From Diadema antillarum (Eukaryota): 64,000 nt of DNA. The notes under the pieces were generated by a model that saw only the letters and a program-made list of their open reading frames with translations, made no database searches and had not been told where the DNA came from. The stretch covers positions 1,674,001 to 1,738,000 of the forward strand of contig NW_027271384.1 of NCBI RefSeq assembly GCF_040938485.1, read 5' to 3'. A program made the position numbers and the translations under genes. Below, in pieces: positions 231-59,055 of this stretch. How positions within the stretch are numbered: the stretch's first letter is position 1; each line of letters begins with the position of its first letter.

Positions 231-291
231 AAGAGTGCATGAGAGCTTTGCAAAATATGAGTACAGGTCTAACACTCAGATATCTACTTAC

Positions 292-343
292 CAGAGTATG
301 CCCTGTGCAGAGTCTGAGATCCGTAAGCCATTGCAGCTGGAAT
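292..343 (-). other. Candidate 52-nt exon of an unidentified minus-strand gene divergent from FXN
   Basis: On the minus strand, acceptor ...gacccctcttgcag and donor TG|gtaagt; all three frames are open. Confidence 0.3.
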
Positions 344-3300
344 CTGCAAGAGGGGTCATTAAAGAGGACACTTTATGAGGAGACTTTGCCTTACAGATAA
401 CTAGATAATTTAAACCAGTGCTTTCACTAACAGTACTTTTATGATTTCATCTTACTGAACAACTCTATGTTTTAGATGTGTTCGCAAGAAGACGAACTGA
501 TCTACAGGTGACAATCTCTTCAGAAAAACAACACATACATTGCACAACACTGAACAGTTAAACGGGAACACAATAAATCAAATAAATCCATTGCAATGTG
601 AAGATCTGGGCCACTATGTGACCACAAACATCAACCTCCTGCCCCCTCCCCCCCCCCAAAAAAAAAAAAATAATAATAATAATAATAACAATTATTCTTC
701 AGTCCACTGTATGGACAGGCTGAAAAGAAACAAAAAGTTATAATAATGACATAGAAATCACCACCAAAAAAATACTGATGAAAATCTGAATTTTCACTAA
801 TTCTCATTTTTAGTCCAGGGCCTCTTTACTTATTACTAATGCAATGTCTCAGGAAAATATCTTGGTCAATGTTTACATTGTGCCAAAAACAGAGTTACCG
901 TACTGAAAATGCATTTCAAGTATTGAGCCTCCTTAGAATTACATGTAGACTCTAGTCAATTATGTGAGACACGATGTACATTGTAACTTCCTAAGAAAGC
1001 ATCATTATCATGTAGGTGTTGGGGGAGAAACAATGCCAAGTTTTTCAACTAACAATATGAATAATGATTTACATGAAAAAAAAAGGAGGCAGATTTCTTG
1101 GTTTTGCAAATGAATGTAAGGCAACGCTGCAAACAGGCACTGGTCTGATGGTCCGGGACCAGTAAAAATCACTGTCGGACCAGTAACTTTTTCAGGAATG
1201 GACCGGCAAAAAAATAGAAAAACTTGGTACCTACTGGCCTGGCAGACAAGTCGGACTAGTACAAAAAAATGTGTAAGGGGTGAAAATGAATGATTAAAGA
1301 ATGACAAATTATTAACTCATGGAAGACTGGAGTGACTTCTTCCTCCTTTTTGGCTTTCTGTTTTCTGGTTTGTTTGTTTGTATGTTGTTGTTGGTTTTTT
1401 TTTCTCTCTCTCTTCATCAAGATTAAAACAATGATATTTACATATATTTCCATATTGATTATGTTGATTATTAATGCATAGAATTTAAATCATAATGCTA
1501 GTTGCCCTTTCACTTAATGTGAGAAAAATATTTTCATTCATTGTGGATGCCAAAAGCATCCACACCAAGTGCTAAACTTGGATGAAATGGACCCATGCAT
1601 GCTTTACAAAGATCCACTTGACCACTGAGCCAAATCGATTGGGATTTCTGCAAGATATAGGGAACAAGTTATACATGTACCTATGATGTAGTTACATACC
1701 CTGAAATAGCATCTAGATTGTTTGGTTATTATGACAGTTATCAGATGCAGAAAGTCCAATGACAATTTTTTTTTTTTTTTGCGCAAACTGTACGCTAAAA
1801 TTTTCACAGTGGTTTTCACTGTTGCATATTGAATATCAATGATTATATTCCCCTTGGCTGTGAAGTATATATGCATGTTGCCTGGCTCCAACCGGCAACT
1901 ACTGTATGCTGCGCGGTGGTGTACATCATGTAACCCCTTGCTCATCAATGTGCCAGTGCATGTAAAACAGTGTACATACATACACACACACAAACACACA
2001 CACCCTTACGTACCCCTGCCCTGCAAGCACGGTGCACTTCCTTATTTGTTGTAGTAACCCGCATCTCGCATCAATATTGACAATTAAAGTGGGTAACCCA
2101 GTTCAGCGGATTTGGGTTGCTGGACTCTTCCCCCCCCCCCCCCCCCATCCACACTAAGGTTAGCTAGTATATGTGGGTGACCCGCACCTCGTCATAGTTA
2201 ATATTTATGCATATTTGAATCACATTTAGTCACTGAAATTCTATGAAATCCCATTCACATACAGGCAAAATGCTGAAGATTCCAATAGAATCTCAAGTTC
2301 ACTGATCGATACCGGAAATTTGCAGCTATCGTCGTCAAATGCAAACGATGCGAAATAGTTGTGCGCTAAGAAGGGGGCCCGCAACTCGTCACCCGCGCTC
2401 CCATAGACAAAGCACATAAAAGACGTGTGCGGGTGACCGTGATGCTCCCATAGACATACACGTCAAAGATGCATGCGGGTAACCGTAATGATACTTATAA
2501 CACGTATTCCTAATATAAATTTCAGATTTTCGCGAAAAACTCTTCGGTTTTCACCACAATTTGCTTGGTTGTGGTAGTCCTGCCAAGTTTCAAGTGTACT
2601 GAACACAATCCCAGGCATGAATTAGGCCTATATTCAGTGCGTTCGTAACAATTTTAAACAGGGTGACGGTATTCGGGCCCCTGGCGAGATGCAGGCACCT
2701 CACTATAAATTTAGTCTGTACTTTTAGTGCCTCTTTGATTTTATCATGTTTTGCAAGGCACTCGTAGTCGTAGCAGCCACCCTGCGAAATATTACAAATT
2801 TCGCAAATAGGCTCTCATTGTCTCAATCATCAAAATATTTAACAGCACCCACCCAAAAATACCGACAGAAATTTAAAATTTGCTCTCTGCACGCACTGCC
2901 AGCAAATCTTTGTAATGTTAATTTAATGCGTTTTAATAATAGAAACCATCTAGGCCCGCATACTGTTAGTGTTACTGGATCTGTTTTTGTTTTTGTTTTC
3001 CTGAGATTTGATCACATTTATCACTGTTTAGGTGTCTGAGTTGTAGTCTAACATTAGCAATTTGATTAGTTAAGTTAGACAGTCCCACAGGCCACACTTT
3101 GTCACTTGCACTTCCTTCTGAACATCAACTTCAAGTGTGTCACTGTCAGTGTGTGTTTGTTTGTTTTTTTGTTTGTTTGCAATTATCATGAAAAAGCCGA
3201 CAAAGTGCAAAATAAACAACCTGCAAAGAATTACACTTATAATTGCAAATTGCAGTTACATTCTGTGAGCTATGTTTATCAATTATTTATTCTACCTTGT

Positions 3301-4022
3301 GGGCACCTACCTTCTGCACCATGAAACAACAATCACTTCAAACACAGCCTGCAGTCCTGTCTTGCCTTTTTGGGGTTGTAACGAACGATTCAGGTAAAGT
3401 AGAATCTATATAATTACAGATTCTAATAGCATCTAGACCATCTTAGATGATAGAAACAGCGACAATGTGATGAATATCATCTATGCAAAAGGAGCTTAAT
3501 ACCATTCATTCATGATGATACCTACAGCACTTCTTCGGCACTCGACTCACTGCTTCACACACACTGTGTAATAGCATTTCGTATAGAGCTAGCTAGCTAG
3601 CTGCATAGGGTTTTCAGCTCGTTCGTATGTTATTGCCAAAAATAGGATGTGTCATCACACTTGCTTGTACACTGTTTGTACATTAGCCTAAAACAACCTC
3701 GTCCGCATGAGCCGTAGCATCGGTAATAGCACTGCCGCGCAGCAGCACTGCCGCGCAGTAGCACTGCACTAGCTAGCTGGCTGCCATGCATGCATGTAAC
3801 GAACTTTCTGAAACCCCTTTCGTCCCCGGGGGCGAGGGAGGCAGTACAAGTGATTTATCGGTAGATGGCGTTGTTTGCTTTATCGTCTGCTGATGCTGAA
3901 CATACACACTAATAATATGCATGTACGTGCATGCACAATCTGGAGCAACAAGAACCAATTACCAAGCATCACTGCACTGATCGAGTATTTTACATCAAGC
4001 AAATTGTTAAGATTGGGGAAAA

Positions 4023-4145
4023 ATGTCTTTACAATTTCGACTGTGTACAATGTATGTAAAACGGAACCAAATCATATCAAAACAACTAGAACTATGTATC
4101 CGTATTTCATCATCACCACCATCGCCATCGCCAGCAGTGATGATG
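4023..4145 (+). CDS. FXN: Frataxin exon 1 (mitochondrial presequence-like, MSLQFRLCTMYVKRNQIISKQLELCIRISSSPPSPSPAVMM)
   Basis: aaaATG start and donor ATG|gtaagt at 4146. Phase 0 joins exon 2 in frame, giving about 212 aa in total. Confidence 0.7.
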
Positions 4146-4639
4146 GTAAGTAGAACACAAGATCCCATATGTTCAAATCCATGTCAGTATCATTCTTTAA
4201 CAGCTCAGTCGCGACTATTGACAGCTCTGCATTTTGCAACAGTTAACATGCAAACCCAGAAACAGGGACTTTCTCTAATCCCTCATATAGGAATCAATTG
4301 TTCTCTTTTGTGATGTGTAGTTATATAGTATAACTGAATTGTAGTGAAGTCAGATTTGTATTTCCGTAAACCGAGACATGAAATGAATGTTTATTTAATT
4401 TACATTTCCTTGGACCTTGGCTTTATTAGCTGCTGACTGTTTAGAATCTAATCTTTATTGACATGACAAATCAAAAGTTCAATGGTGTTTGGCTCTTGAG
4501 ACAAATGCTAATAAAATTATGCCGGGGCCAACTAGACAGGGGGTGCACTGATGATGGTAGTGCAGGGAGAAAAGTCAGTTGCTTTGCTCTTGGATGGATG
4601 TAGATCTAGTGAATCAAAGGGCTGCTGTATTGAAAGTAT

Positions 4640-5140
4640 CCTTGTTTGAAATGTCAGTGAGCGTTACAGTGACTGCTGATGGCAGTGCATTCAACTCTGT
4701 GATAGTCCTTGGTGATGTGAATGAGTACTTGTACTAAGTAGCAGAGGGCCGCCTCTGGAGAACCCTTTGGACGGGATGCGCGGCTTTTTGTACTGGAATG
4801 GATAGGTGACCTGCAAGCGCCTCGCGGAATACGGTGATGCATCCCACCCTGTGGCCTGTGTCGTGTTGCAGCATTTCCCAGTCCACCTCAGGCTTCATAT
4901 GATATCAGTGATGCTGCTGTGTCTGGAATAAATTGTGCCGCTTATGTTTGAGGAGCTTCTACTTCCCGTCTGTCTGTATCAAAATCTGGATGTGGGGGTC
5001 CCAAACTGTTGAGCAGTAGTTGAGTAACAGTCTTACAACTATACAAGAGTCTTAAAGGTCATGTCCTTGGTTTTCTTGGCGCAGTTATGTATTTCTCCTC
5101 AGGAATCCTAACAGGTATTTATTTGACTGAAAAAGCCATT
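4640..5140 (-). mobile_element. Decayed CR1/L2-group LINE 3' reverse-transcriptase remnant in FXN intron 1
   Basis: Frameshifted minus-strand pieces LGFLRRN..., LNYCSTVWDPH and YYKYSF..PRTITELNALP match RT C-terminal motifs of this group. Confidence 0.75.
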
Positions 5141-5360
5141 TCAGGTGAATTTATTCATCATTATGCCATTTACTATGCTTTGAAGTGACATGCAAAGCAA
5201 GGGTATTAAAATAAGTTTATTGGCAAGAGTTCCAATTGTACCCTTATTTAAATTGATCCTGCGCTGAGTGGTAGAGTTGGGTAAACCATGACACTTGAGG
5301 GTTGGGTTTGATTGTAAGTTTGCAGGGTTTAAATTAGGGTCTTAATCTCAGAGCGAGGTA

Positions 5361-5546
5361 CAGTGCACTCCCGTTATAACGAACATGGTTATAACAAAAT
5401 TCCGGTTACAACGAAATAAAACTTTAGACTGCAACATTATCGGCTTTATGTATTTCTATTGTATATTTGTTCGGTTATAACAAAGTTTCGATATAACAAA
5501 AGGAAAATGCCGGTCCCGAGGACTTTGTTATAATGGGAGTCCACTG
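5361..5546. mobile_element. Tc1/mariner (pogo-like) MITE, TA TSD
   Basis: TA|cagtgcactcccgttataac ... gttataatgggagtccactg|TA; internal gttataac repeats. Confidence 0.85.
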
Positions 5547-5971
5547 TACATATAAACTCTTTGCCAATAAATCCAAGACAATTGTACAATGGTGAGTCTG
5601 CTTTCACTCCATCTTTGTTGATGGTAAAAGGTATCGAAGTAAAAACATTTGTAGAGGGTAATTGACGAACTTCATCACATGGTTCATTCATTGTTGGTAT
5701 ATCTGCTTGCAAGACCTTATTGCCCCCCCCCCCCCCCCCCCCCCGACTCATACCCAGTATAGGTAGTACCCATGGTGCCACTTGCCAAATGCATGCAAGT
5801 GAGTGCATCTGTGCATAAGCTATAAAAAGGTTAGGGTAGTGTAGAATGGTTTGGCAAAATTAGTGGGGGACATAAGGAAGTCTTTCCTATCTGCTATCTA
5901 CATCTCTGTCTTCTTGTTTGACAATATATTTTGTTCTTTAAAAATCTCTCTTTCTTTACTACCCACTGCAG

Positions 5972-6123
5972 AGACAAATGTCATCATGGCAGAGAATGCG
6001 CATCATACACAATCAGGGCAAGGCATTAAATGCCATCTCCCGTACCAGACACCAAGCAGATGTTGACCAGTTGCATACATCAGGAATATTTGCCCAAAGT
6101 TTCAGAAATAAATCCACTCAGGA
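5972..6123 (+). CDS. FXN: Frataxin exon 2 (RQMSSWQRMRIIHNQGKALNAISRTRH...RNKSTQ)
   Basis: Acceptor ccactgcag, donor GA|gtgagt; 152 nt, phase 0 to 2, open frame, Arg/Ser-rich. Confidence 0.8.
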
Positions 6124-6975
6124 GTGAGTAATTTAAAAAAGAACGCCTGCAAGAGTTGCTTAGGTACATTCTGTACTGTGTATGATGTAAAACAATGTAA
6201 ATACATACATGAAGCAAAAATTGATATATGTATTATTTTTCCCTGGAGAAATTATCATTTTTAATTAGTTTCTGTAGAGTCCAAGAGAATAGGGAAATGG
6301 GTTGGAGTTTTGCAACTTTGTAATATTTGTATCAGTCTGTGTGTGGCCACAGAAGGGTTTATTGTGACAGAAAAAAAAATTGAGATGAGACTTCAAGTAT
6401 AGGATAGTACATGAACTGTGAAAAATGTAAACTTTTCACTCAATGATTTTTCTTCTACCTCTAGTCTATTTCAGCAAACTTTCCATGTTTATCTCTTCAT
6501 GGGTGGGACTATCCCTCACACATACACATACTGCAATAGGACATCTCCCCAAACTGTTCATGGATGACTCGACTCTATATGTGCTATTTCATAATGAAAT
6601 GCAGAATTCATGAAATTTTCTATCCCATGAAATATTCCACTTTTACAGGAAATAACACAGGCTATGAAATCACTGTTAATCTGACATTTCACACAGCTTA
6701 CATATTAAAGACTTTTAACCTGCTGAGGACAGTTTGATATTGCTACAAAATGCATTTCCGAAAGACACCTGCCCGAGTATACTTGGGACTCATCCTCAAC
6801 AGGGTTAATTACTCTTTACAATAAGTAATGTTGATAATTTTCTTATAACATTTACACAATGTCCAACTGATTATAATTTGCACTATTCTAGAAAATCTGC
6901 ACTGATTTCTTGTTGAATTGTTTGATTCATATACATGTATGTAGCTGTTTCTTTGCTCTTACAACATATTAACAG

Positions 6976-7096
6976 GGTCTTAACAGAGATGCAGTATGAG
7001 AAACTTGCTGATGAGGCTCTGGACTATTTGGCCGAGATGTTTGAAATTCTTGGAGATTCTGATGACAGCGCATCTGACTTTGACTGCACATTCAGT
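6976..7096 (+). CDS. FXN: Frataxin exon 3 (acidic helix 1: VLTEMQYEKLADEALDYLAEMFEILGDSDDSASDFDCTFS)
   Basis: Resembles the frataxin alpha-1 region; aacag acceptor and AGT|gtaaga donor; phase 2 to 0. Confidence 0.95.
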
Positions 7097-7352
7097 GTAA
7101 GATTAAGTGTTTGCTAGTAAGACATTGAAAGAAATGTTGTAGTATAAGTTGCTTATCTGCACGGGATATTTTGCATCATACTCATCAGGATTATCCTTTA
7201 CATAGAATCAGCATTAGTGCAACTGCATAATTATTTCCGTCATGATGGTTTTTCCTTTTCATATTGTTGAATGACTTCCAAGATTCAAAATAATCTAGTA
7301 CTTACTATTGTTTTATTTCCACATCTTCCAGAGTGCCCCAGATTGCGATTTG

Positions 7353-7395
7353 CATGATATAGATTTACATGATATAGATTTACATGATATAGATT
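7353..7395. repeat. 15-bp tandem repeat (catgatatagattta) x~3
   Basis: Direct inspection. Confidence 0.85.
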
Positions 7396-7471
7396 AGGCA
7401 CTTCAATACTGTATTGTAAATCATATAAATTTGTCCATTTTTTTTTCTTAAATTTTGTATTTGTTTTCTAG

Positions 7472-7594
<123 letters not shown>

Positions 7595-8202
7595 TAGCAA
7601 CTGAGGAAGATCTGATAGCATATTCAGGTTGCTTCGAAAGACTCCATGTTATTGTAACGCTATGTTCGCACATGGTGATTAAGAATGTTCCTTGTTAAGA
7701 TGTACCATTATGGACTAAAGTCAATGCATACACATGTTACAACATGCAAACAGACATTTGATGTAGGTTTATCGAGGGTTTTTTTTTTTCTTTTTTTCCC
7801 TGTTTTATTGTAAGCCCTACAGAGAAGTTACATACGCCATTCATGTCTATCTTTGTCACTTGAGCAAGGTTTCTGCATGAATCTGTTTAGATAAAATTTA
7901 TAATATATAAATTGAGGGGGAAAATATGGCTGTGTGCATGGTGAAGGTGACGTGTGTATGTATTCAGGCAGAAATATTTCAGATTGCTATTCGTAATTTA
8001 TGTATGGAAATATACATTTTTGTTGGTGGATTGTATTAAGGTATCAATTTCTAAATAGACTTTTCAGGGCTGTAATCAAGAACTTCTGACTTCCAACAGG
8101 GCTCACTTTTGTGCCACATCTGTTCATAGCATAATACTTGACACTTTCACAATTCTGTATGTGACATCTAAGCTCTGTTCTTCTCTCACCTTTGGTTTCC
8201 AG

Positions 8203-8347
8203 TGGTCCCAAGAGATATGACTACGTCGGCAACCGATGGGTGTACGCCCACGATGGCAAAGCTCTCCATGATCTCCTCACAGAAGAGATATCCACCACGT
8301 TTGGCAGGCACATAGATTTCACTACGGCGGAGCGATGGGATCCGTGA
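8203..8347 (+). CDS. FXN: Frataxin last exon (GPKRYDYVGNRWVYAHDGKALHDLLTEEISTTFGRHIDFTTAERWDP*)
   Basis: SGPKRYD...W-Y-HDG--LH-LL--E motif; tttccag acceptor; TGA at 8345-8347. Confidence 0.97.
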
Positions 8348-8537
8348 CAACAAAGATCTTGCACATGAACTCCAATCCCATTGCTATGATACCAGTTCAC
8401 ACTCTTCAGAGTCTGTGAATAACTTGATATGCATCTTTGCAATATATTCAATATAAAATGGTGACATCTTGTGGATTCAGAAATTGCCTTTAACAATTCT
8501 CTCATTATAAATACACTCACATGTATGTTAGTACATA

Positions 8538-8705
8538 CAGTGCACTCCCGTTATAACGAACACGGTTACAATGAAATAAAAATTCAGGCCACAAATTTAT
8601 CCTATCTTTGTTTTCTATTGTTCATTTGTTCGGTTATAACAAAATTTCGATATAACGAAAGAAAACTGTCGGTCCCAAGGACTTCATTATAATGGGAGTC
8701 CACTG
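8538..8705. mobile_element. Second copy of the 5361 MITE family, TA TSD, 190 bp after the FXN stop
   Basis: TA|cagtgcactcccgttataacg ... attataatgggagtccactg|TA. Confidence 0.85.
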
Positions 8706-10109
8706 TATAAAAGCATGTTTCTTGTGACCATAAAGTGGTGTGTGTCAACATACCATCTAGACTAAGGACTCCAAACTCTACTATATGATCTGGTCACAGC
8801 TTCTTGCATCATTAATTCATAGGCATTCGATAGGCCAGCAAAATCACTGTAAGTCCAGCTATGGTAAACAGAGGTGTTCTGTCTTATTTTGAACTGCCCG
8901 AGAGTACATGTATCAAGGTCAGAAGCTTCTACGTTCATGTGACAAGTGATTGGCATTATGGCAATGAAGCGAGAGACAATAAAAATGACATCCAATGCTA
9001 ATCCTATATCCCCCCCCCCCCTTTCCCCCTACCCATTCAGTTTTAGACGTTTGCCAAGCCATATAATGAGATGAGATATATATGACAGGACACAGAATAT
9101 ATCACTTAAATAGACAGTTATGTTTGGTCAAGCATTACATATGTCTCCAAGTGGAAGAGATGTATGCCCCTATGCTATCCTAGAATCTGTTACCTTTGCA
9201 TCCTGTCATACTTTGGGTAGGGATTGTTTTAGTATTTTTAACTGATTCCCTCCAAGATTCTGAAATCTTTATAGCCAATGAATAAAACCATCAGGCTTGT
9301 GCAGGCTATGCTGTATTGCTGGAGATTCTACAACTTCATTTTGGGTTCTATGATTTTGTAAATAGAAAATGATAATTGGTGTGTATGTGCTTTGTAATGA
9401 TATTACGAGAAGAAAGTCAATGGACCACCAGTCACTGACAGAAGAATATCATGGCCATAAGATGAATGATGTTATTGGTCTCAACGTTTGTTTTGTCTCA
9501 ATGCACTTGTCATTCTTGCCCTGTGTGTTATGTGACCAGTGTATGGAATATGCCAATAATTTTCCGGCACAAAGCACTAGTGTTGCAAAACATTACAATG
9601 TACTAGCTGGCCAGTGACTGCCACTCAACTCTGAGTTGCCTTTGGTTAAATGTTTTCCACTTCCTCTGCCCTCTGCTGTTGTTTACCTGTGAATAGCACC
9701 TTAAAAGCATGATTGATATAGAGATTGGTGAGTTACACAGACAAGTATGAATCTAATTCCACAATACCAGCCTTCCTCATTACATCCTTCCCCCCCCCCC
9801 CCCCCCCCATGATATCCCTACATGTTAGCCCTAACAAGGCCCGGCTACAATTCTAGGTAGATGATTGGGGTGGGGGGGGGGGGGGGGCTCCAAGGCACTC
9901 CCAGCCTCATTAACTATTAAAAAAAAAAATAGACAGTGGTACCATGTTCCCTTGGAACTAAAAACTTTCTGATTCATGAACAGGTTGGAAAGGATCTACT
10001 TACTTTCATTTTCCACTGATTAGTCTCCAGTGGGATTAATGTTATGTTGTTTGTGTGCTTGTGCATGACATGATTATGTGTATGTGAACCAAAGTGCTGT
10101 CCTCAAATG

Positions 10110-10330
10110 TTTTTGGTGTGATGCACTTTCACCCTCTGGTTGCCCAAATCAAAGCACAGTCTGAATGAACAACAAAGGCAGATCAGAGTGTCATCAGAAC
10201 ATCTGTACAGTCTTGGTCTGTAAGAGGAATTTGCTAAGAATGTCAGGTCTTGTAATTTGGTCATTTCAGCATCTATTTTCCCCTGAACCTCAACAGGACC
10301 ATCAATGCACAGCAGCATATCAGCGAACCA
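10110..10330 (-). mobile_element. Possible highly decayed LINE RT fragment
   Basis: LQDL...SSYRPRLYRCSDDTLI loosely resembles the INDL...RLYADDT catalytic region. Confidence 0.3.
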
Positions 10331-10934
10331 ATCAGCTGAGAGCAGTCAAGGTGCAGCTACGGTAGCTGCAAGCACATACCAATGGTATGACTTACCAAGG
10401 CAGTGAGCCAAAATCACACTCAACAGCATGGAGTCAATAGCTATGGCAAAGTTTCTAGAGAACATACTCAACTAAAAATATTTATAAAGAAAACAGTACA
10501 ACAGACATAGCTGCATCTCAACATATTGAGCTTCGTGTATGCACAAACGCAAGAAATCAAGTACACTTGTACCTCCACATGGTCACTCAGCAAGACAGTG
10601 ATCTGGTTTACACACCATAATTCAGTCATTTATTGGCATCTGTAGATGAGTTATTATGCATGTATTCCCAGTGAACGTGAATTCCACCACAATGTATAAT
10701 TAGTGTTACATTTGTACTACTGATATCAGACATTTTAACATTTTAACAACAAAGCGGGAGGAGTATACATACATCGTATAACATCCTACTCAGAACTTTC
10801 CTTTAATTCAGACCATTCAGTTTGCCTTTCTCTTTAAATATTGATAAATGTATCAATCCTAATATAACATGGGTGTGTATATATTTTATGACTATCCTCA
10901 TGACTAATTACATCATTAGATCCAAAATGCTTGA

Positions 10935-11294
10935 AGGGATGGTATAGTTTTGGTTCAGACGGAGCTTCAGGTTTCCAACTTTCTGGTGAAATCAAAACTT
11001 CTTATGAAATATGAAACAGCATACAATTCTACGAAGAATCCAAAGTTCAATGAATGAAAATTGGTTTTGGAATGGCTGAGAGGTCCTAATAAAAGATGGG
11101 ACTCACTTTTTACAAGGTCCACTTTGTTTTACTTTGTTTTTTTTTTATCTGAGCCATTAAAACCTATTTTCATCACATAAACTTCGAATTCATCTCAAAA
11201 TTGTATACTCTTTCATATTTCATCAGTGGTTTCTGATTACATTGCAAAAAGTTGAAATATGAATCCCCCTCTCAATCAAAACTACACCATCCCT
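10935..11294. mobile_element. Kolobok-type MITE (same family as 30653-31034, opposite orientation), degenerate TTAA flanks
   Basis: TIR agggatggtatagttttg / caaaactacaccatccct; internal similarity to the 30.6-kb copy. Confidence 0.75.
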
Positions 11295-11984
11295 GTAAAG
11301 ACTCTAGTTCTACACACAATTTCACAGTGCCCATAATGTACCTGTTACAGACCACTCAGCTCTACCTGCTGGGGATTAATGAGCAGAGCTTTGTTTATGG
11401 TGCTGTTACATTTAAACCATAATGCTGTCAAAGAAACATACTCGGCTCATCTTACTTTCACTATGTGCTTGGGCATTGATATACTTCTATCCATCGATCT
11501 CTGTAACAACATAAGTTTTTATGAAATCATGATCACATTGAAAAGGGTAATTCATTCAGCATGAAAAAAAAAGGTCCATGGTGTACCTGAATACCATTTA
11601 TTGAAGTGAGTTATTGTTTCTTTCACTGTTGCACAGACTGAGAGCCTGTAATGATTTTGTGTCGGCTGTTTTGTTTTCAAACACAAGAAACATACATTCT
11701 TGCCTTCACATATTTTCAGAAGTTGGCACATTCTCTGCATGCCAGTATTCTTGGTCAATACATGCAAATGAGAAAATGGACAGCTACAGAGTTACAAGGG
11801 CACCCAAGGAATGAAGCAATATAAGAAATATGCGGACACACCCTTTCAAGTTTCCCACTCATCGAGGAAAGTGGGTTAAGTATTGAGATTACTAAAAGAA
11901 AAGTGTCCCCCTGGGTGGTTTCATGGTAACCTGAGCTTTAAGACAAGTTCAGCCTAAATGCAACTTCACAGTGGTGCCCCTTAA

Positions 11985-12382
11985 AGATAATATAAAGTTT
12001 TGGTACCTCAAAAGTTTCCCTGAGTTTCGTTGTCTTAGTTTGTGTTTCAGGTTAAAGTACCTTTCATATAACTAACACTGTGAGACTTAATCGCCCCAAA
12101 GTGCTCTCATGTCTTAGTAATCATGCAATAATGGTTTCGTACAATACGTGTATCTTGATTGTCGCGGTAAAGCATCGAGTCAAACTAACGGCTCGTTCAT
12201 TTTTTCAGAGCCCGCTCTGCTCTGGTACGAAACCATTATTGCATGATTACTAAGACATGAGAGCACTTTGGGGCGAGTAAGTCTCACAGTGTTAGTTATA
12301 TGAAAGGTACTTTAACCTGAAACACAAACTAAGACAAGGAAACTCGGGGAAACTTTTGAGGTACCAAAACTTTATATTATCT
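11985..12382. mobile_element. Kolobok-type foldback MITE, TTAA TSD, 158-bp near-perfect arms
   Basis: TTAA|agataatataaagttttggtacc ... ggtaccaaaactttatattatct|TTAA; arms 11985-12142 and 12225-12382. Confidence 0.9.
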
Positions 12383-12578
12383 TTAACAGTATGTCAGTCA
12401 TCAAATTGAAACTACCGTACTTCAGGAGCCTTACAAAGTATCAAAGAATAGTATTTGGATAGAGTGAATCGAAGTATGAATATTGTCAAATATACTTGTA
12501 TCCAAGTATATGTATGTATGATCACTTCACCACAATGACATTTTTGCAATTAAAACTTTATTCTTAGCATTCATTTAA

Positions 12579-12685
12579 AAAGCTAAATCCTGGGCTTGTA
12601 TGTGTTTCATTAGTTTAAAACAAAATCAACTCAGAATTTGTGTTTTACACTAATGAAACACATACAAGCCCAGGAATTTACCTTT
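12579..12685. mobile_element. 107-bp hairpin mini-element with TTAA flanks, followed by a partial direct copy (12691-12759)
   Basis: cctgggcttgtatgtgtttcattagt / actaatgaaacacatacaagcccagg arms with a ~9-nt loop. Confidence 0.8.
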
Positions 12686-13419
12686 TTAATTAAATTCCTC
12701 GGCTTGTATGTGTTTCATTAGTTTAAAACATAATCAACACAGAATTTGTGCTTTACACTCTTTGTACCTAATTTTTCTGAGCTGATGACAAAAATCATGT
12801 TACTCAAATTCAATTTGGCTTTACACAATTGCAGCTGATGTCACCAGAGAAAATTGTGAGTTGAATCTGACAGAACAAGAAAATGACATTTTCACAAATC
12901 AACATCTCTTTCCAACATATTTATATGGCATATATAAAATACAAATTCAGATTAGGTAAGCAGAATGCTTGAGCAATATCTTTTTGGCCAATTTTCACAT
13001 GATGTAGTACAACTTTGCTCACAAAAATATTCAGATACATTTTTGTAACAGTTGCAAATTCTTCCTCCAACTTCTAGTATGCCAAAGAATTAGACACACA
13101 AAATAACCAACAAACACCATTATTTGACAGATAAAGTAAATTTACTGAATGTCATAAATCTGCTTACGAACTGTATTGCTGCATTACAATTTGATTAAAA
13201 CACATTTCAAATAACAAAATAAAACTTGCCTATAGTGATCGCGATTAAAACTTAGTAAAATTATACAAAAGAAGCTTACAATATAATACATGCATTTCAG
13301 GACTGCCATTAAATAAGCTTGATATAATTATGAATGGCAGCTAGTACCACATGGTATTCTATTCATAATTACATTGTACTAACTTCATTGCATGTAAAAT
13401 CACACAACTCTTCTGAATA

Positions 13420-13905
13420 TTAGTGTCAACCTTTCAATGTCAACACAAAATATTTACCTCTGAAATTTTCAGCTGTCAACACAACAGTTTTCATCAGGGG
13501 AATGATCCTTCCACACCCTGATCACATAATGGTCGATAAGCTGGTCATAGACTTTCAGAAGTTTTGTAGTTAACCCTTATGCCAAACTTGTTGAAGTTCC
13601 TATGCAAAGCATCAGAAACTCCTTTGATGTAAGGCAGTACAATCTGTCCTTTTGATGGAGTTGTAGAGTTCTGTGATGGTGTGTGACTCTTTCTTCTTGG
13701 GCTGGCTGATCTTATCAAAGGCCCACGGAGGATAGCCGCAGTTCAAGAGAGCCTTTTTGATGTCACGTTTTCCTTTCTCTACTACTTGCTTTAACCGCCA
13801 CATGATCAAGGCAAAGACGGATAATTCCACAGATGAAGGCTATAGCGTTAACAACTGAAAATTTGGGAGGTAATCACCTTGTGTTGACATCAAAAGTTTA
13901 ATGTC
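13420..13905 (-). mobile_element. 5'-truncated Penelope-like retroelement remnant with pseudo-LTR-like termini
   Basis: KKALLNCGYPPWAF and IVLPYIKGVSDALHRNFNKFGIRVNYK are typical PLE post-RT motifs. The terminal segment at 13420-13500 recurs inverted at ~13830-13900. Confidence 0.75.
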
Positions 13906-14717
13906 AATTTCAGATGAATTTCCAATACAGATGAGCTTCTACTCTAACACAGAAATCTTTTGAAGATATCTTGAGTGTCTATAGGTCTACCTCTTAAAGC
14001 TATAGCTCTACTACAGTCTACTATCAATCATCAATCACCACTGTACCACAAACAGAACAACTCATCCAATTTCTGGAACTTGTAAATAATTTTCACTGGC
14101 ATAGTGCCATATCAAGATTAGTGCATACACCTTTAAACTCACAGCAACAAGACTTCACCATCTAGTACATACAGTGCGTAGCAGAATACATGGTTTACTA
14201 TCATAAATACTAAATGCCATCTGACGATACAATGCTACTCTGAGATCATGAATTTCACAGTGGATGTACATGAAGGTATGGAACGATCACAAATAACTTA
14301 GCATCACACAAAACTGAGCTGGAAGAGTTGTCTTTGAAATGATAAAACTTTTTTCAGTTGATTTCAGCTGCACTTCACCTATGTAAATCATACATATCAT
14401 ACAAAGAACATGATGAAAACTTGTTTTGTGATCTTAGTTGCATAAACTGTCAAATAACAGCACTATGCTTTTGTCACTGCCACCTTTTGAAACCTGGAAA
14501 AGCTGGAAAGGTTTTGTTGGGGGGGGGGGGGGGGAGAGATATATATTCATGTATCAATTTTATTACATGTTTACATTTTTTTCTCCCTGCTAATAAGCGA
14601 TTCTTGGAGATACAGTGTACTCACAGTTAATATGTCTCTCACCCAGTGATATTATTAAATTAAATACCCAAATGCAGGGAGGGGGTTATCATACAGTGCT
14701 GTCAGCACACATTAGAA

Positions 14718-50100: not shown

Positions 50101-50756
50101 CACTCAACCAAAAAAGTAAGTTCCCCCTAGCATTTTTAGATATATCTCAAAAAGCATTTTACTGATTTTCATGATTCAAACGGAAATGGATAGGGAGTTT
50201 TATTACTCATAACATGAATGGCATATCATTGCCACCAGGTATCATTATTGGTGTGAAAAAAATGCATTTTATGTCGAAATGCATGGGAAAAAAGTTGCAC
50301 TTAACGTTATATGAAGCATATTGTGTACACATCCTATGCAAGTTAGCAAATGACCTTTTTAAATTGTTATGTAATTCTCAGGAATTTCTTCAGGTACAAT
50401 GTGCTTCCCTATTAAACAGATGTTATGCATACTTTTTAAACAATAGGCCTTTTCAATATGAAAATGTTGGTAGAAGCCATGTGCTTTTTAATTCCAATTT
50501 GGGTTGATCACATTAATGTGCTTATGGCCATTTTGCATCATGCCGCGTCTGCAAATTTTTGAAAGAGGGAGAGCTACAGTGTTCCTTGAAGCTGGGGTTC
50601 GGGTTAAGGAGGTGGCCAGGAGACTAGGGGTTTCGCTCAATGCCATAAGGAAACTTAAAAGTTCAGAATCATGAGTGATTGTTTGATTGACATAAAATGC
50701 ATTTTTTTTTCCACACCAATAGTGATATCTGGTGGCAATGATATGTCATTCATGTT
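50101..50756 (+). mobile_element. Tc1 deletion derivative retaining the transposase N-terminal HTH (50540-50674); right TIR truncated
   Basis: MPRLQIFERGRATVFLEAGVRVKEVARRLGVSLNAIRKLK; 50211-50275 is inverted at 50689-50756. Confidence 0.8.
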
Positions 50757-50931
50757 GTATGTAATAATAATGATAATAATAAATAGTAAATATAATTCAG
50801 TCATATGTTAACAGTCTTTCGTTTGTCATGAATTAGTGTCAGCACAATCTATATCCCTCATGCCTTCCGAAAGGTGTAGTGATACCAATCATGATTTTGA
50901 TGGAAATGTCGCCACAGTCATTTTTGTCCTG

Positions 50932-51097
50932 GGGCCCGTTGCATAAAACTTACCGTTGAATTTCAATGGTAACTACCGTCAAAATTAAGCACCACAGCCA
51001 ATCAGCATCAAGGATTATAAAATTTAACGCTAATTTGAAGACTTACCGCTAGAAAGGAGCGGTAAGTCCAGCGGTAAGGGTTGAATGCAACAGGGCC
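50932..51097. mobile_element. 166-bp MITE, CTG TSD (Harbinger-like), copy 1
   Basis: CTG|gggcccgttgcat ... atgcaacagggcc|CTG. Confidence 0.85.
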
Positions 51098-51173
51098 CTG
51101 ATCACAGTAGGAGTTCTGTGGCCCTGATCGATCAGCCATGACTGACGCATGTCGGTCGCTGCATGCAGACCTG

Positions 51174-51339
51174 GGGCCCGTTGCATAAAACTTACCGTTG
51201 AATTTCAATGGTAACTACCGTCAAAATTAGGCGTCACACCCAATCAGCATCAAGGATTATATAATTTACCGCTAATTTGAAGACTTACCGCTAGAAAGGA
51301 GCGGTAAGTCCAGCGGTAAGGGTTTTATGCAACAGGGCC
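51174..51339. mobile_element. 166-bp MITE, CTG TSD, copy 2
   Basis: Same length, near-identical to copy 1, with its own CTG TSD. Confidence 0.85.
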
Positions 51340-51353
51340 CTGGCGCGCCGGCG

Positions 51354-53360
51354 CACAGTGGGCCAGAATGAGCTCAAAGTGCGCCAGAATTATATTCCGT
51401 GGTTTCTTTTTACCCAAATTTGGTGTCTAGGGGTAATTTGGGGCGTAGAATTGATTGAACATAATTTCAAACTCATATGACGTCACTGTGATGCTGTTTT
51501 TTCATTGGCTACCAAAAATCTGTGTAAATGACGAATAAAGCAATGCAAATCTTAGGCTGTTATTTTTTTTCTTTAAAGATTAATATTTATCTTTTCACAT
51601 TCACTGACACTGCTTATATACTACCATTGAATACACGATGCTTACATGTCACAGAAAGTGTGTAAACATTCGGGTTTCGTTAAAAGAATCGAATTTATGC
51701 TGAAAGTTCCATATTACACACGTACTGCAAAATGATACTGTTGTCCGTGTAAACTAGTTACAATATAAGTTTATGATGTATGAACGCCGTACTTTTGGGT
51801 GAATTTTTTCACTTTATTCTAGCAGGACATAAAATAAAATATGCGATATAAAATCAATCTCCGATATAGTTCTTATCTCTCTACTTCATAATGATAACCT
51901 TAGGCCTATGCCATATCAATTCATGATTACAAGCGCAAAAACCATTTTGTCTAATTTTACTGGAAAAATAAAAAAAATGTGAAGTCAGTAATCAGGAAAA
52001 TGAAAGATTATGATTTAGCAGCCAAGAATGAGTCTGCCGTGTATAAAAGTTTACTTGGAAAAGCTTCTTTTTTTTTTTTTTTTGGATGAAAAATTTATCG
52101 GAATCACTATCATATGAAATTATTAATTCATCCACGTTCCACAATGATTTTTTTTTTTCTCATCAGTCGTCGGAAGCAAAGTTTTTTTTTTTCTCTTTTT
52201 TTTTGCTTCCGACAACCCATAAAGTGTATGGGATCACAGTCTGATGAATCCGACTTGTATTGGTCGCCTATCAGGTCAATGTCAGACATGTCAGGCATGA
52301 TCCGATGAGGCAAGATCGTCCGATGAGGATCACGCGAGCAATGTCTGACAATCACCTGCAATCGGATTCACAAACTGCGATCCTATACACTTTGCTGAGC
52401 GGCCGGAAAGCAACAGACTTTGTTTCCAACGAGTAATAGATGAGAATAAAATTTCTGTGTTTTGGTGTATAACGTTCTATCTGCATATGTCAAGAGTAGG
52501 ATCGAAGTATTTAGGTGTCCACACAGTATGTAACGCAGTGGAAATAGCTATGTTTACAGTAGTGGCTATGGCAATTATGAACAATAGGCTATATGGCCTT
52601 GGCTATGTGAAATTATGTACTCTTTTATCGTCTGAGGAGGGGTCTTTTAGGTGCCAGACTAGCCCTATACAATCTGTTTGCCTCTTTTTCAGTGTTATTC
52701 ATGTTTCTGTGCCTTTAACGTGCGAGAAAAAATAAATAAATTTTACAAAAAGTGCCGCCCTCATGCGGCCCCGTATGATATAACAGCATTCCTGAGCGGC
52801 TGCAAGGTCCAAAATAGACGTATTGTGTCGCGGAAAATCGGCTCTAACACAAAAAGTGGCAAAAGGTGGCAGCCAAATCTGGTATCAGCTTAAAGCTGAG
52901 ACATCAGGGAATGTGGTGGTAATAGAATTTAGTTGGAAATCCGTGGCAATCTAAACTTTTCATTAGGGTATATTAAAAAGACAAATAATTAGCCTCTTTT
53001 CCAGGATATTTAGCGTAAAATATTCATGAACATTAAGTTTCTTTGCATTTTTACGGCATTCATAACGTAAAATGAACTCTGAGAAATATGTGGGAGAAAT
53101 TACAGGTTGATATCTCAAAAACTACATGTTGACATTACTTATTTATTAAAGAGGTTACAATTTGCTTTGAAACTCTTAAAATATTGTATTTTGCTACTTC
53201 AGGTAGGAAATATACCCCTTTAATGTACATACCTGATTTAAATATTTCAATGATAAATTCCTCAAAGTATTGCCTCTCAAGGGCGCATGTCAAAAATTAA
53301 AAAATCCCAAGTGCCCAAAGTGACTTTTGGCGCACTTTGGTATCTCTCTGGCCCACTGTG
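51354..53360. mobile_element. Non-autonomous Transib/RAG-type transposon, 2007 bp, CACAGTG termini, 5-bp TSD CGGCG
   Basis: CGGCG|CACAGTGGGCCAGA...CAAAGTGCGCCA ... TGGCGCACTTTG...TCTGGCCCACTGTG|CGGCG; TIRs 30/36 identical. Confidence 0.88.
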
Positions 53361-53662
53361 CGGCGCCGTCCTACTATTTGTAGCGGAATGCTGCCCTCTC
53401 GTGTTGCGTCGAGTGTCAGCGAATGTCACCGCCATATTTCGTCGAACGGCTGAAAATACTCCGAGTACTCTTACGGGCAGAAAACAGAGCGATTTCTTCG
53501 TCGGGGTGACAGCAACGGAGTCTTTTATTACGAGTGTGCTACGATTCTAGAGTATTTTAAGGCTTTCGTGTATTTAGCGTTGTATCTGAATTCGTATATT
53601 GACCGCATTTTTACGATTACTGAAAGAGATATCCACGCTGTTCCTTGTCACAGCTGTGCAAG

Positions 53663-53920
53663 ATGTCAACGGAGGAAGCACAATCCGCGCCCGATGGATC
53701 CCCGGCAACGGAAGTACCAGCGCCCGCAGACAAACAAGAGGAGAGCATGGACACAAATCCACCGCCGTCATCTGAATCTCCAGCAGGAAAAACAGAGCGC
53801 GAAAACAATGAGTCAAGTCAAACTATTCCAAAGGATGGCTCTGAAAAAGTAACAAAATCGACACAGCCAGTAATTAAGCCGCCAGTACCAAAAACTATCC
53901 AGGACAGACCGTCAAAACAG
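53663..53920 (+). CDS. ENSA: Endosulfine exon 1 (acidic, disordered N-terminus, 86 aa)
   Basis: aagATG start; CAG|gtgggt donor, phase 0. Confidence 0.75.
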
Positions 53921-54627
53921 GTGGGTTCTTCTTTACTGCAGGCATGCAGTCTCCTCACACCCCCCCCCCCCCAAAAAGAAAGAAAGAAAAAGAAACAACA
54001 CAACAGTAGGGCTAGCTAGACAAAGTAAACCTAGATTTAGAAGAAGAACCAGTACTGGTATGTATGCAACATTGCTTTATTTTTACTTATGGACTAACAT
54101 TTCAGAGCCACTTTATTAGAGGGTGATTTTTAACAGTGCAGCTTGGATCATTTGTGACCACTTGAGCATTGAGAGAAAATAAGGGTGGCATCTTGATACA
54201 GTGACAACATCGAACATGGCTGTTCAGTGGTGACCCAAGAGGACTGGCAAATGGTGAATTGCATGTGTTGTGTTTGACCGACAAGTAGGCCCCCTATGTC
54301 TATTTCTGCGAAAAGCTTAATGACATTTGCTGGGTCAGTTTTTCGCTGGTTAGTAGACAGACACCATCGATACATACGCTATTGCAACGGTTTCAACCGT
54401 TCTAGTTAAACGCAACTTCGACTCAGTTCCCCCCGCATAAAATTGGTTATTGTTTTTCCAGCTTGGTTTTCAAGCCAATCTGGAAAATTATCTAGGATAC
54501 AGGATTAATCAGTAAACATTTTGACTCGCCTCTTCCACTGTTTTCTCCTGTTTTCTGGTTGTTTCCTCCACTTCTTTGCAGCGCTCCCCAATTCATCGCC
54601 GCCTTCGTTTGAAAAATGACTGCATGA

Positions 54628-57778: not shown

Positions 57779-58956
57779 TTAATCCCTTCGGGCGCAACGA
57801 TCATATATTATATAAGATTACAGCCGAAATGATTCATGAAATCATCGCATTCCCACAATGCACCAACAGCGTAGAATACCTCGAAAGTTACGGTAAACAA
57901 TGCATAACTATTTGCGCTGGTGTTTAGAAAAACTTAACAAACGCATATTATACAATATGATTTTGTTCATTAATCATTTTACATTGTATTTCACAAACGA
58001 AAAATATACTTTCAGAATGGATCAATACAAGAGGAAGAGATAGGTGTAGAAAGAACCACAGATATAATATAGGCCTACTTGTCAAGAACATAATGTGTAA
58101 CTATTTAATGCGTAGAGATTTTCGGAAGAAAAATGAAAATTAACACATTTTCAACCACTACTTTTTTCCGTCTTTTTTGTATCAATTTACAAATAATTTC
58201 CCTTTATTCTCTCAATAATAATGATCCATAATTGTGTAGAAACAACGCAAAGGATGTTCTTAAGTTTGATTGATGGGTATATGACGTCGTGCTTTTGTTT
58301 TTCTTTGTTTTTGATGCGTACCGTTATAACGAGTTACCGCTTATAACGAGTTACCGGTTATAACGAGGTCATATCGCTGGTCCAATGGACCTCGTTATAA
58401 CAGGGTTTCACTGTATTTGGGGTAATGCCCATTCGTTGGAAACAAAAAACTACCCCACGATAATGATAATGATAATGATAATGAATAACATTTATATAGC
58501 GCTTAATACTGATGTTTCTAAGCGCATCAAATCGGGGAAAAAATAATATATATAACGTAAAAACAAAATACAGCATTATGTACATATATTATGATAACGA
58601 CAGCAACAACAACAACAGCAAAATTAACGATGATGATGATGATGAAACGGCATTTATATAGCACCATTAATCTGTTGAAACATTGAAAGGCGCCTGGCTC
58701 CCACAATGTGTCATGCATCATTCATAAAATTGCTTTAAAGGACAAGTCATCCCTGAAATGTCCCCCTTTACCTTGGAAATACCCATGTAGCAGGGACTGT
58801 ATGTAGAATAATCACATGTCATGCTTGCGTTGAAAAGTAGTCCAGAGTATACTAGGGCAGGTGTCTGGGGAATTGCATGTTATAGCAACAACAGTTTTAC
58901 AGATCAAACTTTGTATTGCTATATATTTTTCATCTTCATTGTTCTCTTTCTCACAG

Positions 58957-59055
58957 AGCATTGAGCAGATGGAAGAGGCCAAGCTGAAGGCAAAGTTTGG
59001 GGGACTTCAAAAGCCAGGAGGTTCACAGTTTCTGCAGAAGAGGCTAAATAAAGGG
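58957..59055 (+). CDS. ENSA: Endosulfine exon 2 (SIEQMEEAKLKAKFGGLQKPGGSQFLQKRLNKG)
   Basis: EEAKLKAK...KPGGS.FL.KRL.KG motif; ctcacag acceptor and GGG|gtcagt donor. Confidence 0.95.

What the first reader, a model, noticed from the sequence alone, without database searches (positions are those of the whole stretch)
51354..53360. Transib/RAG-type transposon with exact RSS heptamer ends inserted at the ENSA promoter
Both ends start with CACAGTG, the V(D)J recombination-signal heptamer, and are flanked by a perfect GC-rich 5-bp duplication (CGGCG), the signature shared by Transib, ProtoRAG and RAG-mediated transposition. The TIRs are bipartite: positions 1-14 and 22-33 are identical and the differences cluster at 15-21, like a spacer. 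On the right end, heptamer plus 23 bp gives CCAAAAGTC (6/9 to the nonamer ACAAAAACC) and heptamer plus 12 bp gives ACCAAAGTG (5/9); the left end matches more weakly. There is no transposase ORF, so it must be mobilised in trans. The intact TSD suggests a recent event, and the right end is only 302 bp from the ENSA ATG. Its partner could be a Transib transposase or a RAG1L-RAG2L system, which are known in echinoderms.
Basis: partly seen in the sequence, partly recalled or inferred. Interest (0 to 1): 0.8.

Follow-up and report, generated by a model that had tools for sequence, protein, structure and literature searches.

The report
Non-autonomous Transib transposon upstream of ENSA
This is a 2-kb passenger copy of a Transib jumping gene, a kind already known in sea urchins. 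It is moved by an ordinary one-gene Transib transposase, not by a RAG1/RAG2-like pair, and it landed in the GC-rich DNA just upstream of the ENSA gene.

Summary
Window 51354-53360 is a 2,007-bp element with CACAGTG at both ends and 31/39-matching inverted ends. Positions 1-14 and 22-33 are identical and 15-21 differ. It has an exact 5-bp CGGCG duplication, no ORF over 92 aa, and lies 302 bp from the putative ENSA start codon.

The partner is a plain Transib transposase. The same ends flank single-ORF elements of about 4-6 kb in Strongylocentrotus purpuratus and several metagenome or read-assembly contigs. A defective Diadema antillarum copy keeps one of them. Their roughly 700-aa proteins match the Helicoverpa zea Transib transposase (E 1e-99 to 1e-103) and barely match amphioxus RAG1L (E about 1e-3). 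None carries a RAG2-like gene.

The window element shares 605 bp at one end and about 190 bp at the other with the Diadema-type autonomous element. It is therefore an internal-deletion derivative.

Across 15 ends, the first 13 bases are invariant, positions 15-21 vary, and positions 22-36 are conserved. Both ends have the same spacing, so there is no 12/23 asymmetry. Eight of nine independent insertions sit at CGNCG.

Depth in contigs from four runs of two coded organisms is tens to about 100 times that of the flanking single-copy DNA. Contigs of the second organism lack the insertion at this site.

Verdict: a new member of a known kind. An earlier scan note records another CAC/5-bp-duplication element in this genome.

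The parts
51349..51353 (.). Left copy of the 5-bp target-site duplication, CGGCG
   Evidence: It is identical to 53361-53365 and fits the family target CGNCG.
51354..51392 (-). Left terminal inverted repeat, which is the 3' end relative to the transposase of autonomous relatives. It comprises an outer 14-mer (51354-51367), a variable 7 bp (51368-51374) and a conserved inner block (51375-51389).
   Evidence: It matches the 3' end of the intact autonomous element L012 at 43 of 44 positions. G51387 is private to this copy; nearly all other copies in the runs have A.
51354..51555 (-). 3' subterminal region shared with autonomous Transib elements
   Evidence: 76-81% identity to the 3' ends in Diadema antillarum L009 and in L012/L013.
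51556..52755 (.). Interior with almost no similarity to the autonomous elements (one 53-bp match to L009 only) and no transposase gene. It is nevertheless repeated in the runs, so it belongs to the non-autonomous family.
52159..52448 (.). Nested, more abundant palindromic MITE-like repeat inside the element (approximate limits)
   Evidence: Inverted repeats I2, I3 and I11. Depth is 4-8 times that of the neighbouring bins. End comparison.
52756..53360 (-). 5' subterminal region shared with the Diadema-type autonomous element, corresponding to the region upstream of its transposase ORF
   Evidence: 79% identity over 606 bp to L009 4644-5246. The transposase coding region in L009 starts near 5959.
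53322..53360 (-). Right terminal inverted repeat, which is the 5' end relative to the transposase of relatives
   Evidence: It closely matches the 5' end of the Diadema copy, including the 7-bp variable part at 6 of 7 positions.
53361..53365 (.). Right copy of the 5-bp target-site duplication, CGGCG
53663..53917 (+). Putative first coding exon of the ENSA/ARPP-19-family gene, 302 bp from the element
   Evidence: Open frame from an ATG with a CAG|GTGGGT donor. It is single-copy and present in both coded organisms. ENSA exons lie downstream on the same strand. The assignment to ENSA is inferred.

Best explanation
The element is a non-autonomous member of the Transib superfamily of cut-and-paste DNA transposons. 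It kept both ends of an autonomous Diadema-type Transib element (about 600 bp of the 5' side and about 200 bp of the 3' side) and lost the transposase gene. A roughly 700-aa single-ORF Transib transposase made elsewhere in the genome would bind the two ends. The expected mechanism, inferred from Helicoverpa zea Transib and RAG biochemistry, runs as follows. The transposase nicks at the CAC of each heptamer, releases the element by making hairpins on the flanking DNA, and inserts it with a 5-bp stagger. This family strongly prefers the target CGNCG. Such sites are rare in this 39%-GC genome and cluster in GC-rich gene starts, which explains a landing site next to the ENSA start region. Shown here: the ends, the duplication, the multicopy state, the cognate transposase family and the target preference. 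Inferred: the chemistry, the presence of an active partner in this particular genome, and any effect on ENSA.
For: Ends and duplication. A scan of metagenome contigs with the bipartite end found L001, which has the same end (32/33), the flank CGACG, and next to it a 444-aa open frame matching H. zea Transib transposase (6pqn, E 6e-35) and no RAG1. Homologues are echinoderm proteins (Amphiura, Diadema, S. purpuratus) and full-length proteins of about 700 aa. Their loci show whole elements with the same ends. These are S. purpuratus L002 (4,882 bp, duplication CGCCG), L004 (4,102 bp, one 707-aa ORF), L007 (CGGCG), L008 (CGCTG) and L010 (3,950 bp, intact 713-aa ORF). P0001 and P0005 match 6pqn at E 1.7e-99 and 5.5e-103 over nearly the whole core. 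Amphioxus RAG1L (6b40) reaches only 6e-4 and 4e-3 over short pieces. The window element shares 605 bp (79%) and about 190 bp (76-81%) with the ends of the Diadema copy L009 and of L012. The 3' end of L012, which carries an intact 697-aa ORF, matches the window's left end at 43 of 44 positions. Summed contig depth over the element is roughly 20 to over 100 times the flanking single-copy depth in four runs of two coded organisms. Organism-A run X1 has the right junction. Contigs of organism B run hundreds of bases past the site without the element. CGNCG occurs only 51 times in 64 kb, yet it flanks 8 of 9 independent insertions. The literature already records Transib and TransibN1_SP in sea urchin, and intact-ended Transibs in many echinoderms (PMC1131882; PMC10629977).
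Against: No autonomous copy was seen in the window's own genome, because only this window could be read. The closest intact partner (L012) comes from an unnamed run, and outside the ends its subterminal DNA is only about 81% identical. Depth from assembled contigs is not a true copy number. The absence in organism B rests on contigs whose alignment stops 15-26 bp short of the insertion point, so no precise empty site was read. This copy may no longer be mobile; it carries a private change at position 34 of one end.
Confidence: 0.93

Rival explanations
1. The element is a non-autonomous derivative of a RAG-like (RAG1L-RAG2L) transposon and is moved by such a pair.
For: It has an exact RSS heptamer, a 5-bp GC-rich duplication and an A-tract 23 bp from the heptamer. 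Earlier scan notes, not checked here, mention RAG1L relics and a possibly mobile RAG-like element in this genome.
Against: Every autonomous element found with these ends has a single ORF of canonical Transib type and no second gene. The window element shares hundreds of bases of subterminal DNA with such an element. The literature reports no RAGL element with intact ends in echinoids (PMC9885083; PMC10629977).
Confidence: 0.03
2. The insertion has been taken over by the host as part of ENSA regulation rather than being a neutral passenger.
For: It sits 302 bp from the putative start codon, at the upstream edge of the block that is single-copy and shared by both coded organisms.
Against: The insertion is absent from the related organism's contigs. 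The site fits the family's target preference. The DNA further upstream is packed with other repeats. No expression data could be obtained.
Confidence: 0.03
3. It is a chance inverted repeat, or an element of another superfamily such as CACTA/Chapaev or hAT.
For: None beyond the CAC start, which CACTA-type elements share.
Against: No match to the bipartite end appeared in any shuffle. The same ends and 5-bp duplications recur in other genomes next to a Transib transposase. Only Transib and RAG-type elements make 5-bp duplications among eukaryotic DNA transposons (PMC1131882).
Confidence: 0.01

Closest known systems
TransibN1_SP and Transib1_SP of Strongylocentrotus purpuratus (Repbase; Kapitonov and Jurka 2005, PMC1131882)
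   Same: They are Transib elements in a sea urchin, both autonomous and non-autonomous. They have a CAC-heptamer end, a 5-bp duplication and GC-rich targets. An S. purpuratus copy with the same 13-base terminus and a CGCCG duplication was read here (L002).
   Different: The window comes from a different echinoid: its TMEM186 is 64% identical to that of S. purpuratus, and its repeats are 88-91% identical to those of Diadema antillarum.
Helicoverpa zea Transib (Hztransib; PDB 6pqn; Carmona et al. 2016, PMC4840297)
   Same: The cognate transposases align over nearly the whole solved core (E about 1e-100). The alignment includes the KWGFDG, MVDQK and SEEAQEARNK stretches that line up with its acidic motifs. 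Both make invariably 5-bp, GC-rich duplications.
   Different: The echinoderm proteins carry about 190 extra N-terminal residues. The ends here carry the exact RSS heptamer plus a conserved inner block. PMC4840297 reports Hztransib ends as having little or no nonamer similarity.
RAGL transposons / ProtoRAG and the V(D)J recombination signals
   Same: They share a heptamer starting with CAC (here the exact CACAGTG), the 5-bp duplication, and an A-rich tract about 23 bp from the heptamer.
   Different: There is no RAG2-like gene and the transposase is far from RAG1L. Both ends have the same spacing, so there is no 12/23 or 27/31 asymmetry. The nonamer match is 6/9.

Membership tests
Transib superfamily (non-autonomous member) | 5-bp target-site duplication | tested here: met
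   CGGCG is exact on both sides. Exact 5-bp duplications also flank L002, L007 and L008, and L010 matches at 4 of 5.
Transib superfamily (non-autonomous member) | Inverted ends that start with a CAC heptamer (consensus CACAATG-like) and carry a second conserved A-rich block about 23 bp further in | tested here: met
   CACAGTG is invariant in 15 of 15 ends. Positions 31-36 read CCAAAA in 12 of the 15 ends. The definition is taken from PMC1131882.
Transib superfamily (non-autonomous member) | Same ends found on autonomous elements that encode a Transib transposase | tested here: met
   L002, L004, L007, L008, L010 and L012, plus the one surviving end of the defective Diadema copy L009. Protein matches to 6pqn reach E 1e-99 to 1e-103. 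Subterminal DNA is shared with L009 and L012.
Transib superfamily (non-autonomous member) | Preference for GC-rich targets | tested here: met
   CGNCG flanks 8 of 9 independent insertions, against a frequency of 0.0008 per base in the window.
Transib superfamily (non-autonomous member) | Nick-hairpin cleavage and transposition by the cognate enzyme | not testable with these tools
   Inferred from Hztransib biochemistry (PMC4840297 and the work cited there).
RAGL transposon (non-autonomous derivative) | Cognate autonomous element carries a convergent RAG1L-RAG2L gene pair | tested here: not met
   The complete elements L004 and L010 hold one long ORF and nothing else over 127 aa. RAG1L 6b40 scores only E 6e-4 and 4e-3.
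RAGL transposon (non-autonomous derivative) | CAC-heptamer ends and a 5-bp duplication | tested here: met
   These features are shared with Transib, so they do not discriminate.
V(D)J recombination signal pair (12/23) | Heptamer plus nonamer with a 12-bp spacer at one end and a 23-bp spacer at the other | tested here: not met
   The heptamer matches 7/7. However, both ends carry the conserved block at the same distance, and the nonamer match is 6/9 at 23 bp.

The most novel reading that the evidence does not exclude
These abundant elements carry the exact RSS heptamer and an A-tract 23 bp further in at both ends. They could therefore be natural substrates of the TIR-less, apparently domesticated RAG1L/RAG2L proteins of echinoids, which might cut or excise them as a defence against Transib. 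That would be a living example of the 'guardian of the genome' idea (PMC8355894). A second, smaller possibility concerns the inner block, which is a degenerate copy of the terminal 14-mer (CAC changed to CAA). It may show how a nonamer-type second binding site can arise by duplication of the cleaved end.
Probability: 0.05. Interest if true: 0.75.

Novelty: new member of a known kind. Interest (0 to 1): 0.25.

Why it matters
As a single insertion it is ordinary. Transib and non-autonomous Transib elements are already recorded in sea urchins, and intact-ended Transibs are known from many echinoderms.

Its modest value lies at the family level. The 13-base terminus includes the exact RSS heptamer and stays invariant while the transposases have diverged to 55-60% identity. 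The end has a defined two-block layout, the target CGNCG is sharp, and intact transposase genes exist in relatives.

This gives a convenient deuterostome Transib system. It could be compared at the bench with Hztransib, ProtoRAG and the echinoid RAG1L/RAG2L proteins that share the same genomes.

Tried and rejected
1. I searched the window for further ends. The only other hit was a 2-mismatch match to the 14-mer at 605-618. It has no inner block and is at the chance level (0.33 expected), so I rejected it.
2. I looked for a transposase remnant of this family in the window by tblastn. There was none; the only hit had E 0.017.
3. Pfam gave nothing for the echinoderm transposases. One distant relative, P0020, gave a sub-threshold RAG1 hit. 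The PDB sequence search was the informative test.
4. The supplementary figure of PMC1131882 that shows TransibN1_SP termini is not held as text. The Nature 2019 Hztransib structure paper is not held either. A direct comparison of the ends with those was therefore not possible.
5. A full-text search for the 13-base terminus returned only unrelated papers.
6. Looking up earlier findings by sequence gave nothing.
7. A precise empty site was not obtained. The organism-B joint at 50924/53387 ends in repeated DNA, so I take it only as absence of the element and not as a footprint.
8. I considered 12/23 asymmetry and rejected it.

Full report
**What is there.** The window holds a 2,007-bp element at 51354-53360. 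It begins with CACAGTG and ends with the reverse complement of the same heptamer. CGGCG lies directly outside both ends, at 51349-51353 and 53361-53365. The two ends match at 31 of their first 39 positions: positions 1-14 and 22-33 are identical and 15-21 differ. The 26 specified bases of this two-block pattern occur only at these two places in 64 kb, and no dinucleotide shuffle produced a match. No ORF inside exceeds 92 aa.

**The neighbouring gene.** The right end is 302 bp from an ATG at 53663. That ATG opens an 85-codon frame ending at a CAG|GT donor. Typical ENSA/ARPP-19 exons follow on the same strand. One, at about 58954-59055, reads EEAKLKAKF...GGSQFLQKRL. The other starts at about 61240 and reads KYFDSGDY (Pfam Endosulfine E 1.2e-6, just under the cutoff for this 41-aa piece). 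The gene is an ENSA-family gene. That the 53663 exon is its first coding exon is inferred, not shown.

**Copy number and presence elsewhere.** I laid Logan contigs of four public runs on 50400-54400. Two runs were of coded organism A and two of organism B, from four studies.
- Summed depth in the single-copy stretch 53482-54017 is 19, 5, 15 and 61.
- Summed depth inside the element is mostly about 950-8,500, 110-1,600, 260-4,200 and 1,350-14,000.
- The tool warns that this is not a copy number. Even so, the whole element, ends most of all, is clearly a repeat family in both organisms, at tens to about a hundred times single-copy depth.
- An organism-A contig spans 53338-53947 with one mismatch, so the right junction exists in an independent run. 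That run may, however, be the assembly's own sample.
- In organism B, two single-copy contigs from two studies align from the ENSA exon leftwards to 53387 and 53376. They then continue for more than 450 bases without matching the element.
- The insertion is therefore absent there. No exact empty site could be read, because the alignments stop 15-26 bp short of the insertion point and what follows is repeated DNA.
- High-depth family contigs differ from this copy by about 2-5% plus small indels in the segments listed. G51387 is private to this copy.
- Taken together, the insertion is younger than the A/B split (about 6% divergence at this locus) but is not brand new.

**The partner.** A scan of metagenome contigs with the two-block end gave one contig, L001. 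It has the same end (32 of 33 positions) and the flank CGACG. About 700 bp further in lies a 444-aa open frame running off the contig. That frame matches the Helicoverpa zea Transib transposase (PDB 6pqn) at E 6e-35 and matches no RAG1 or RAG1L chain at E up to 1.

Its homologues are echinoderm proteins (Amphiura filiformis, Diadema antillarum, Strongylocentrotus purpuratus) and full-length proteins of about 700 aa from metagenome and read assemblies. Further out come insect, rotifer and hydra Transib-type proteins at 32-40% identity.

Fetching the encoding contigs showed the same ends around these genes:
- S. purpuratus L002: a 4,882-bp element with an exact CGCCG duplication.
- L004: a complete 4,102-bp element with one 707-aa ORF and the flank CGGCG.
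- L007: duplication CGGCG.
- L008: duplication CGCTG.
- L010: 3,950 bp with an intact 713-aa ORF and flanks CGCCG/CGACG.
- L011: a further end.
- D. antillarum L009: one intact end with the flank CGGCG.

The complete elements hold nothing else longer than 127 aa, so there is no RAG2-like gene. The full-length proteins P0001 and P0005 match 6pqn at E 1.7e-99 and 5.5e-103 over nearly the whole solved core. Amphioxus RAG1L (6b40) reaches only 6e-4 and 4e-3 over short pieces. The stretches KWGFDG, MVDQK and SEEAQEARNK line up with the corresponding stretches of Hztransib. The first and last also line up with RAG1L. That these contain the catalytic acidic residues is my recollection of the RAG1 D/D/E motifs and was not tested here.

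**Relation of the window element to the autonomous elements.** Its right 605 bp are 79% identical to L009 4644-5246, the region between the 5' end and the transposase ORF of the Diadema copy. Its left 190 bp or so are 76-81% identical to the 3' ends of L009 and of L012/L013. L012-L014, from three runs, carry an intact 697-aa transposase that is 79% identical to the Diadema one. The 3' end of L012 equals the window's left end at 43 of 44 positions, including the 7-bp variable part; the one difference is the private G51387. The middle 1.2 kb shares only a 53-bp match with the autonomous elements and contains a nested, more abundant palindromic repeat.

The element is thus a deletion derivative that kept both ends. 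By transposase orientation it lies on the minus strand, with its 5' end next to ENSA. The Diadema copy itself is defective: the terminal 14 bases of one end are missing, there is a stop codon, and a 3.5-kb insertion splits the ORF.

**Anatomy of the ends across the family.** In 15 ends from 10 sources, positions 1-13 (CACAGTGGGCCAG) are invariant. Position 14 is mostly A. Positions 15-21 vary freely. Positions 22-36 are conserved as CAAAGTGYGCCAAAA. Read as heptamer / 23-bp spacer / nonamer, both ends give CCAAAAxxx at positions 31-39, which is 6/9 to the RSS nonamer. The ends are therefore symmetric and RSS23-like, as Kapitonov and Jurka described for most Transib families (PMC1131882), and nothing resembles 12/23 asymmetry.

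The inner block is a degenerate direct copy of the terminal 14-mer, placed 21 bp further in. It matches at 11-12 of 14 positions, with CAC changed to CAA. I infer two transposase contact sites per end on the same face of the helix, with only the outer one cleavable. This is inference only.

**Target.** Eight of nine independent insertions are flanked by CGNCG; the exception is CGCTG. The motif occurs 51 times in this 64-kb window, or 0.0008 per base, in a 39%-GC, CpG-depleted sequence. Several of those sites lie in the GC-rich block around the ENSA start region. A sharp, GC-rich target is known for other Transib families and for Hztransib (PMC1131882; PMC4840297). It is a sufficient explanation for an insertion next to a gene start. 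No special link with ENSA is needed.

**Host.** The window's TMEM186-like protein is 64% identical to that of S. purpuratus and 63% to that of Lytechinus pictus. Among all fetched loci, only the Diadema antillarum locus shares other repeats with the window, at 88-91% identity. The genome is therefore an echinoid outside the Strongylocentrotus/Lytechinus group. I did not identify the species.

**Comparison with what is known.** Transib1_SP and TransibN1_SP were described in 2005 (PMC1131882). Martin et al. 2023 state that no RAGL element capable of transposition is known in echinoderms, while Transibs with intact ends occur in many echinoderm species (PMC10629977). Yakovenko et al. 2023 found no ends around echinoid RAGL genes (PMC9885083). 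This finding fits that picture and adds one more non-autonomous family member.

I could not read the Repbase consensus sequences or the supplementary figure showing TransibN1_SP termini. Whether this is the same named family is therefore open. Earlier notes of this scan, which I did not check, list another CAC-terminated element with a 5-bp duplication and RAG1L relics in the same genome.

**Limits.**
- Only this window of the genome could be read, so the presence of an active partner in this animal is inferred from relatives.
- Read evidence came from assembled contigs, not raw reads.
- Organisms in the run table are coded.
- No RNA data were examined.

Noticed in passing
window 51354-51389 and 53325-53360; L002, L004, L007, L008, L010, L012 ends: Each end consists of two direct copies of a 14-base motif 21 bp apart. 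The outer copy is CACAGTGGGCCAGA and the inner one CAAAGTGYGCCAAA. The A-rich 'nonamer-like' tract is the tail of the inner copy. This holds across the whole family.
   Followed up: partly
window 52159-52448 (approximate): A nested palindromic MITE-like repeat lies inside the element. Its depth is 4-8 times that of the rest of the element in all four runs, and many contigs change strand within it.
   Followed up: partly
window 50936-51343: Extremely abundant short repeats lie directly left of the element, with summed depth up to about 3,000 times single copy. One has 22-base inverted ends at 51170-51191 and 51322-51343. The ENSA upstream region is a pile-up of small transposons.
   Followed up: no
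L012, L013, L014 (Logan contigs of three runs): They carry an intact 697-aa Transib transposase gene of the same subfamily, 79% identical to the Diadema copy. It lies in an unnamed organism and is a candidate live autonomous element.
   Followed up: partly
L004, L003 (TARA ocean metagenome scaffolds), L010, L011: Complete echinoderm-type Transib elements with open ORFs of 707-719 aa turn up in ocean and other metagenome assemblies. They presumably come from animal DNA in the samples.
   Followed up: no
L007 8526 and 12320: The same element end with the same 12-base flank occurs twice, 3.8 kb apart. This is either a local duplication or an assembly artefact.
   Followed up: no
L001 2139-2687 (minus strand): The DNA next to the L001 insertion encodes a beta-1,4-galactosyltransferase-type exon (Pfam Glyco_transf_7C, E 5e-22). 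This metagenome contig is therefore animal DNA.
   Followed up: partly
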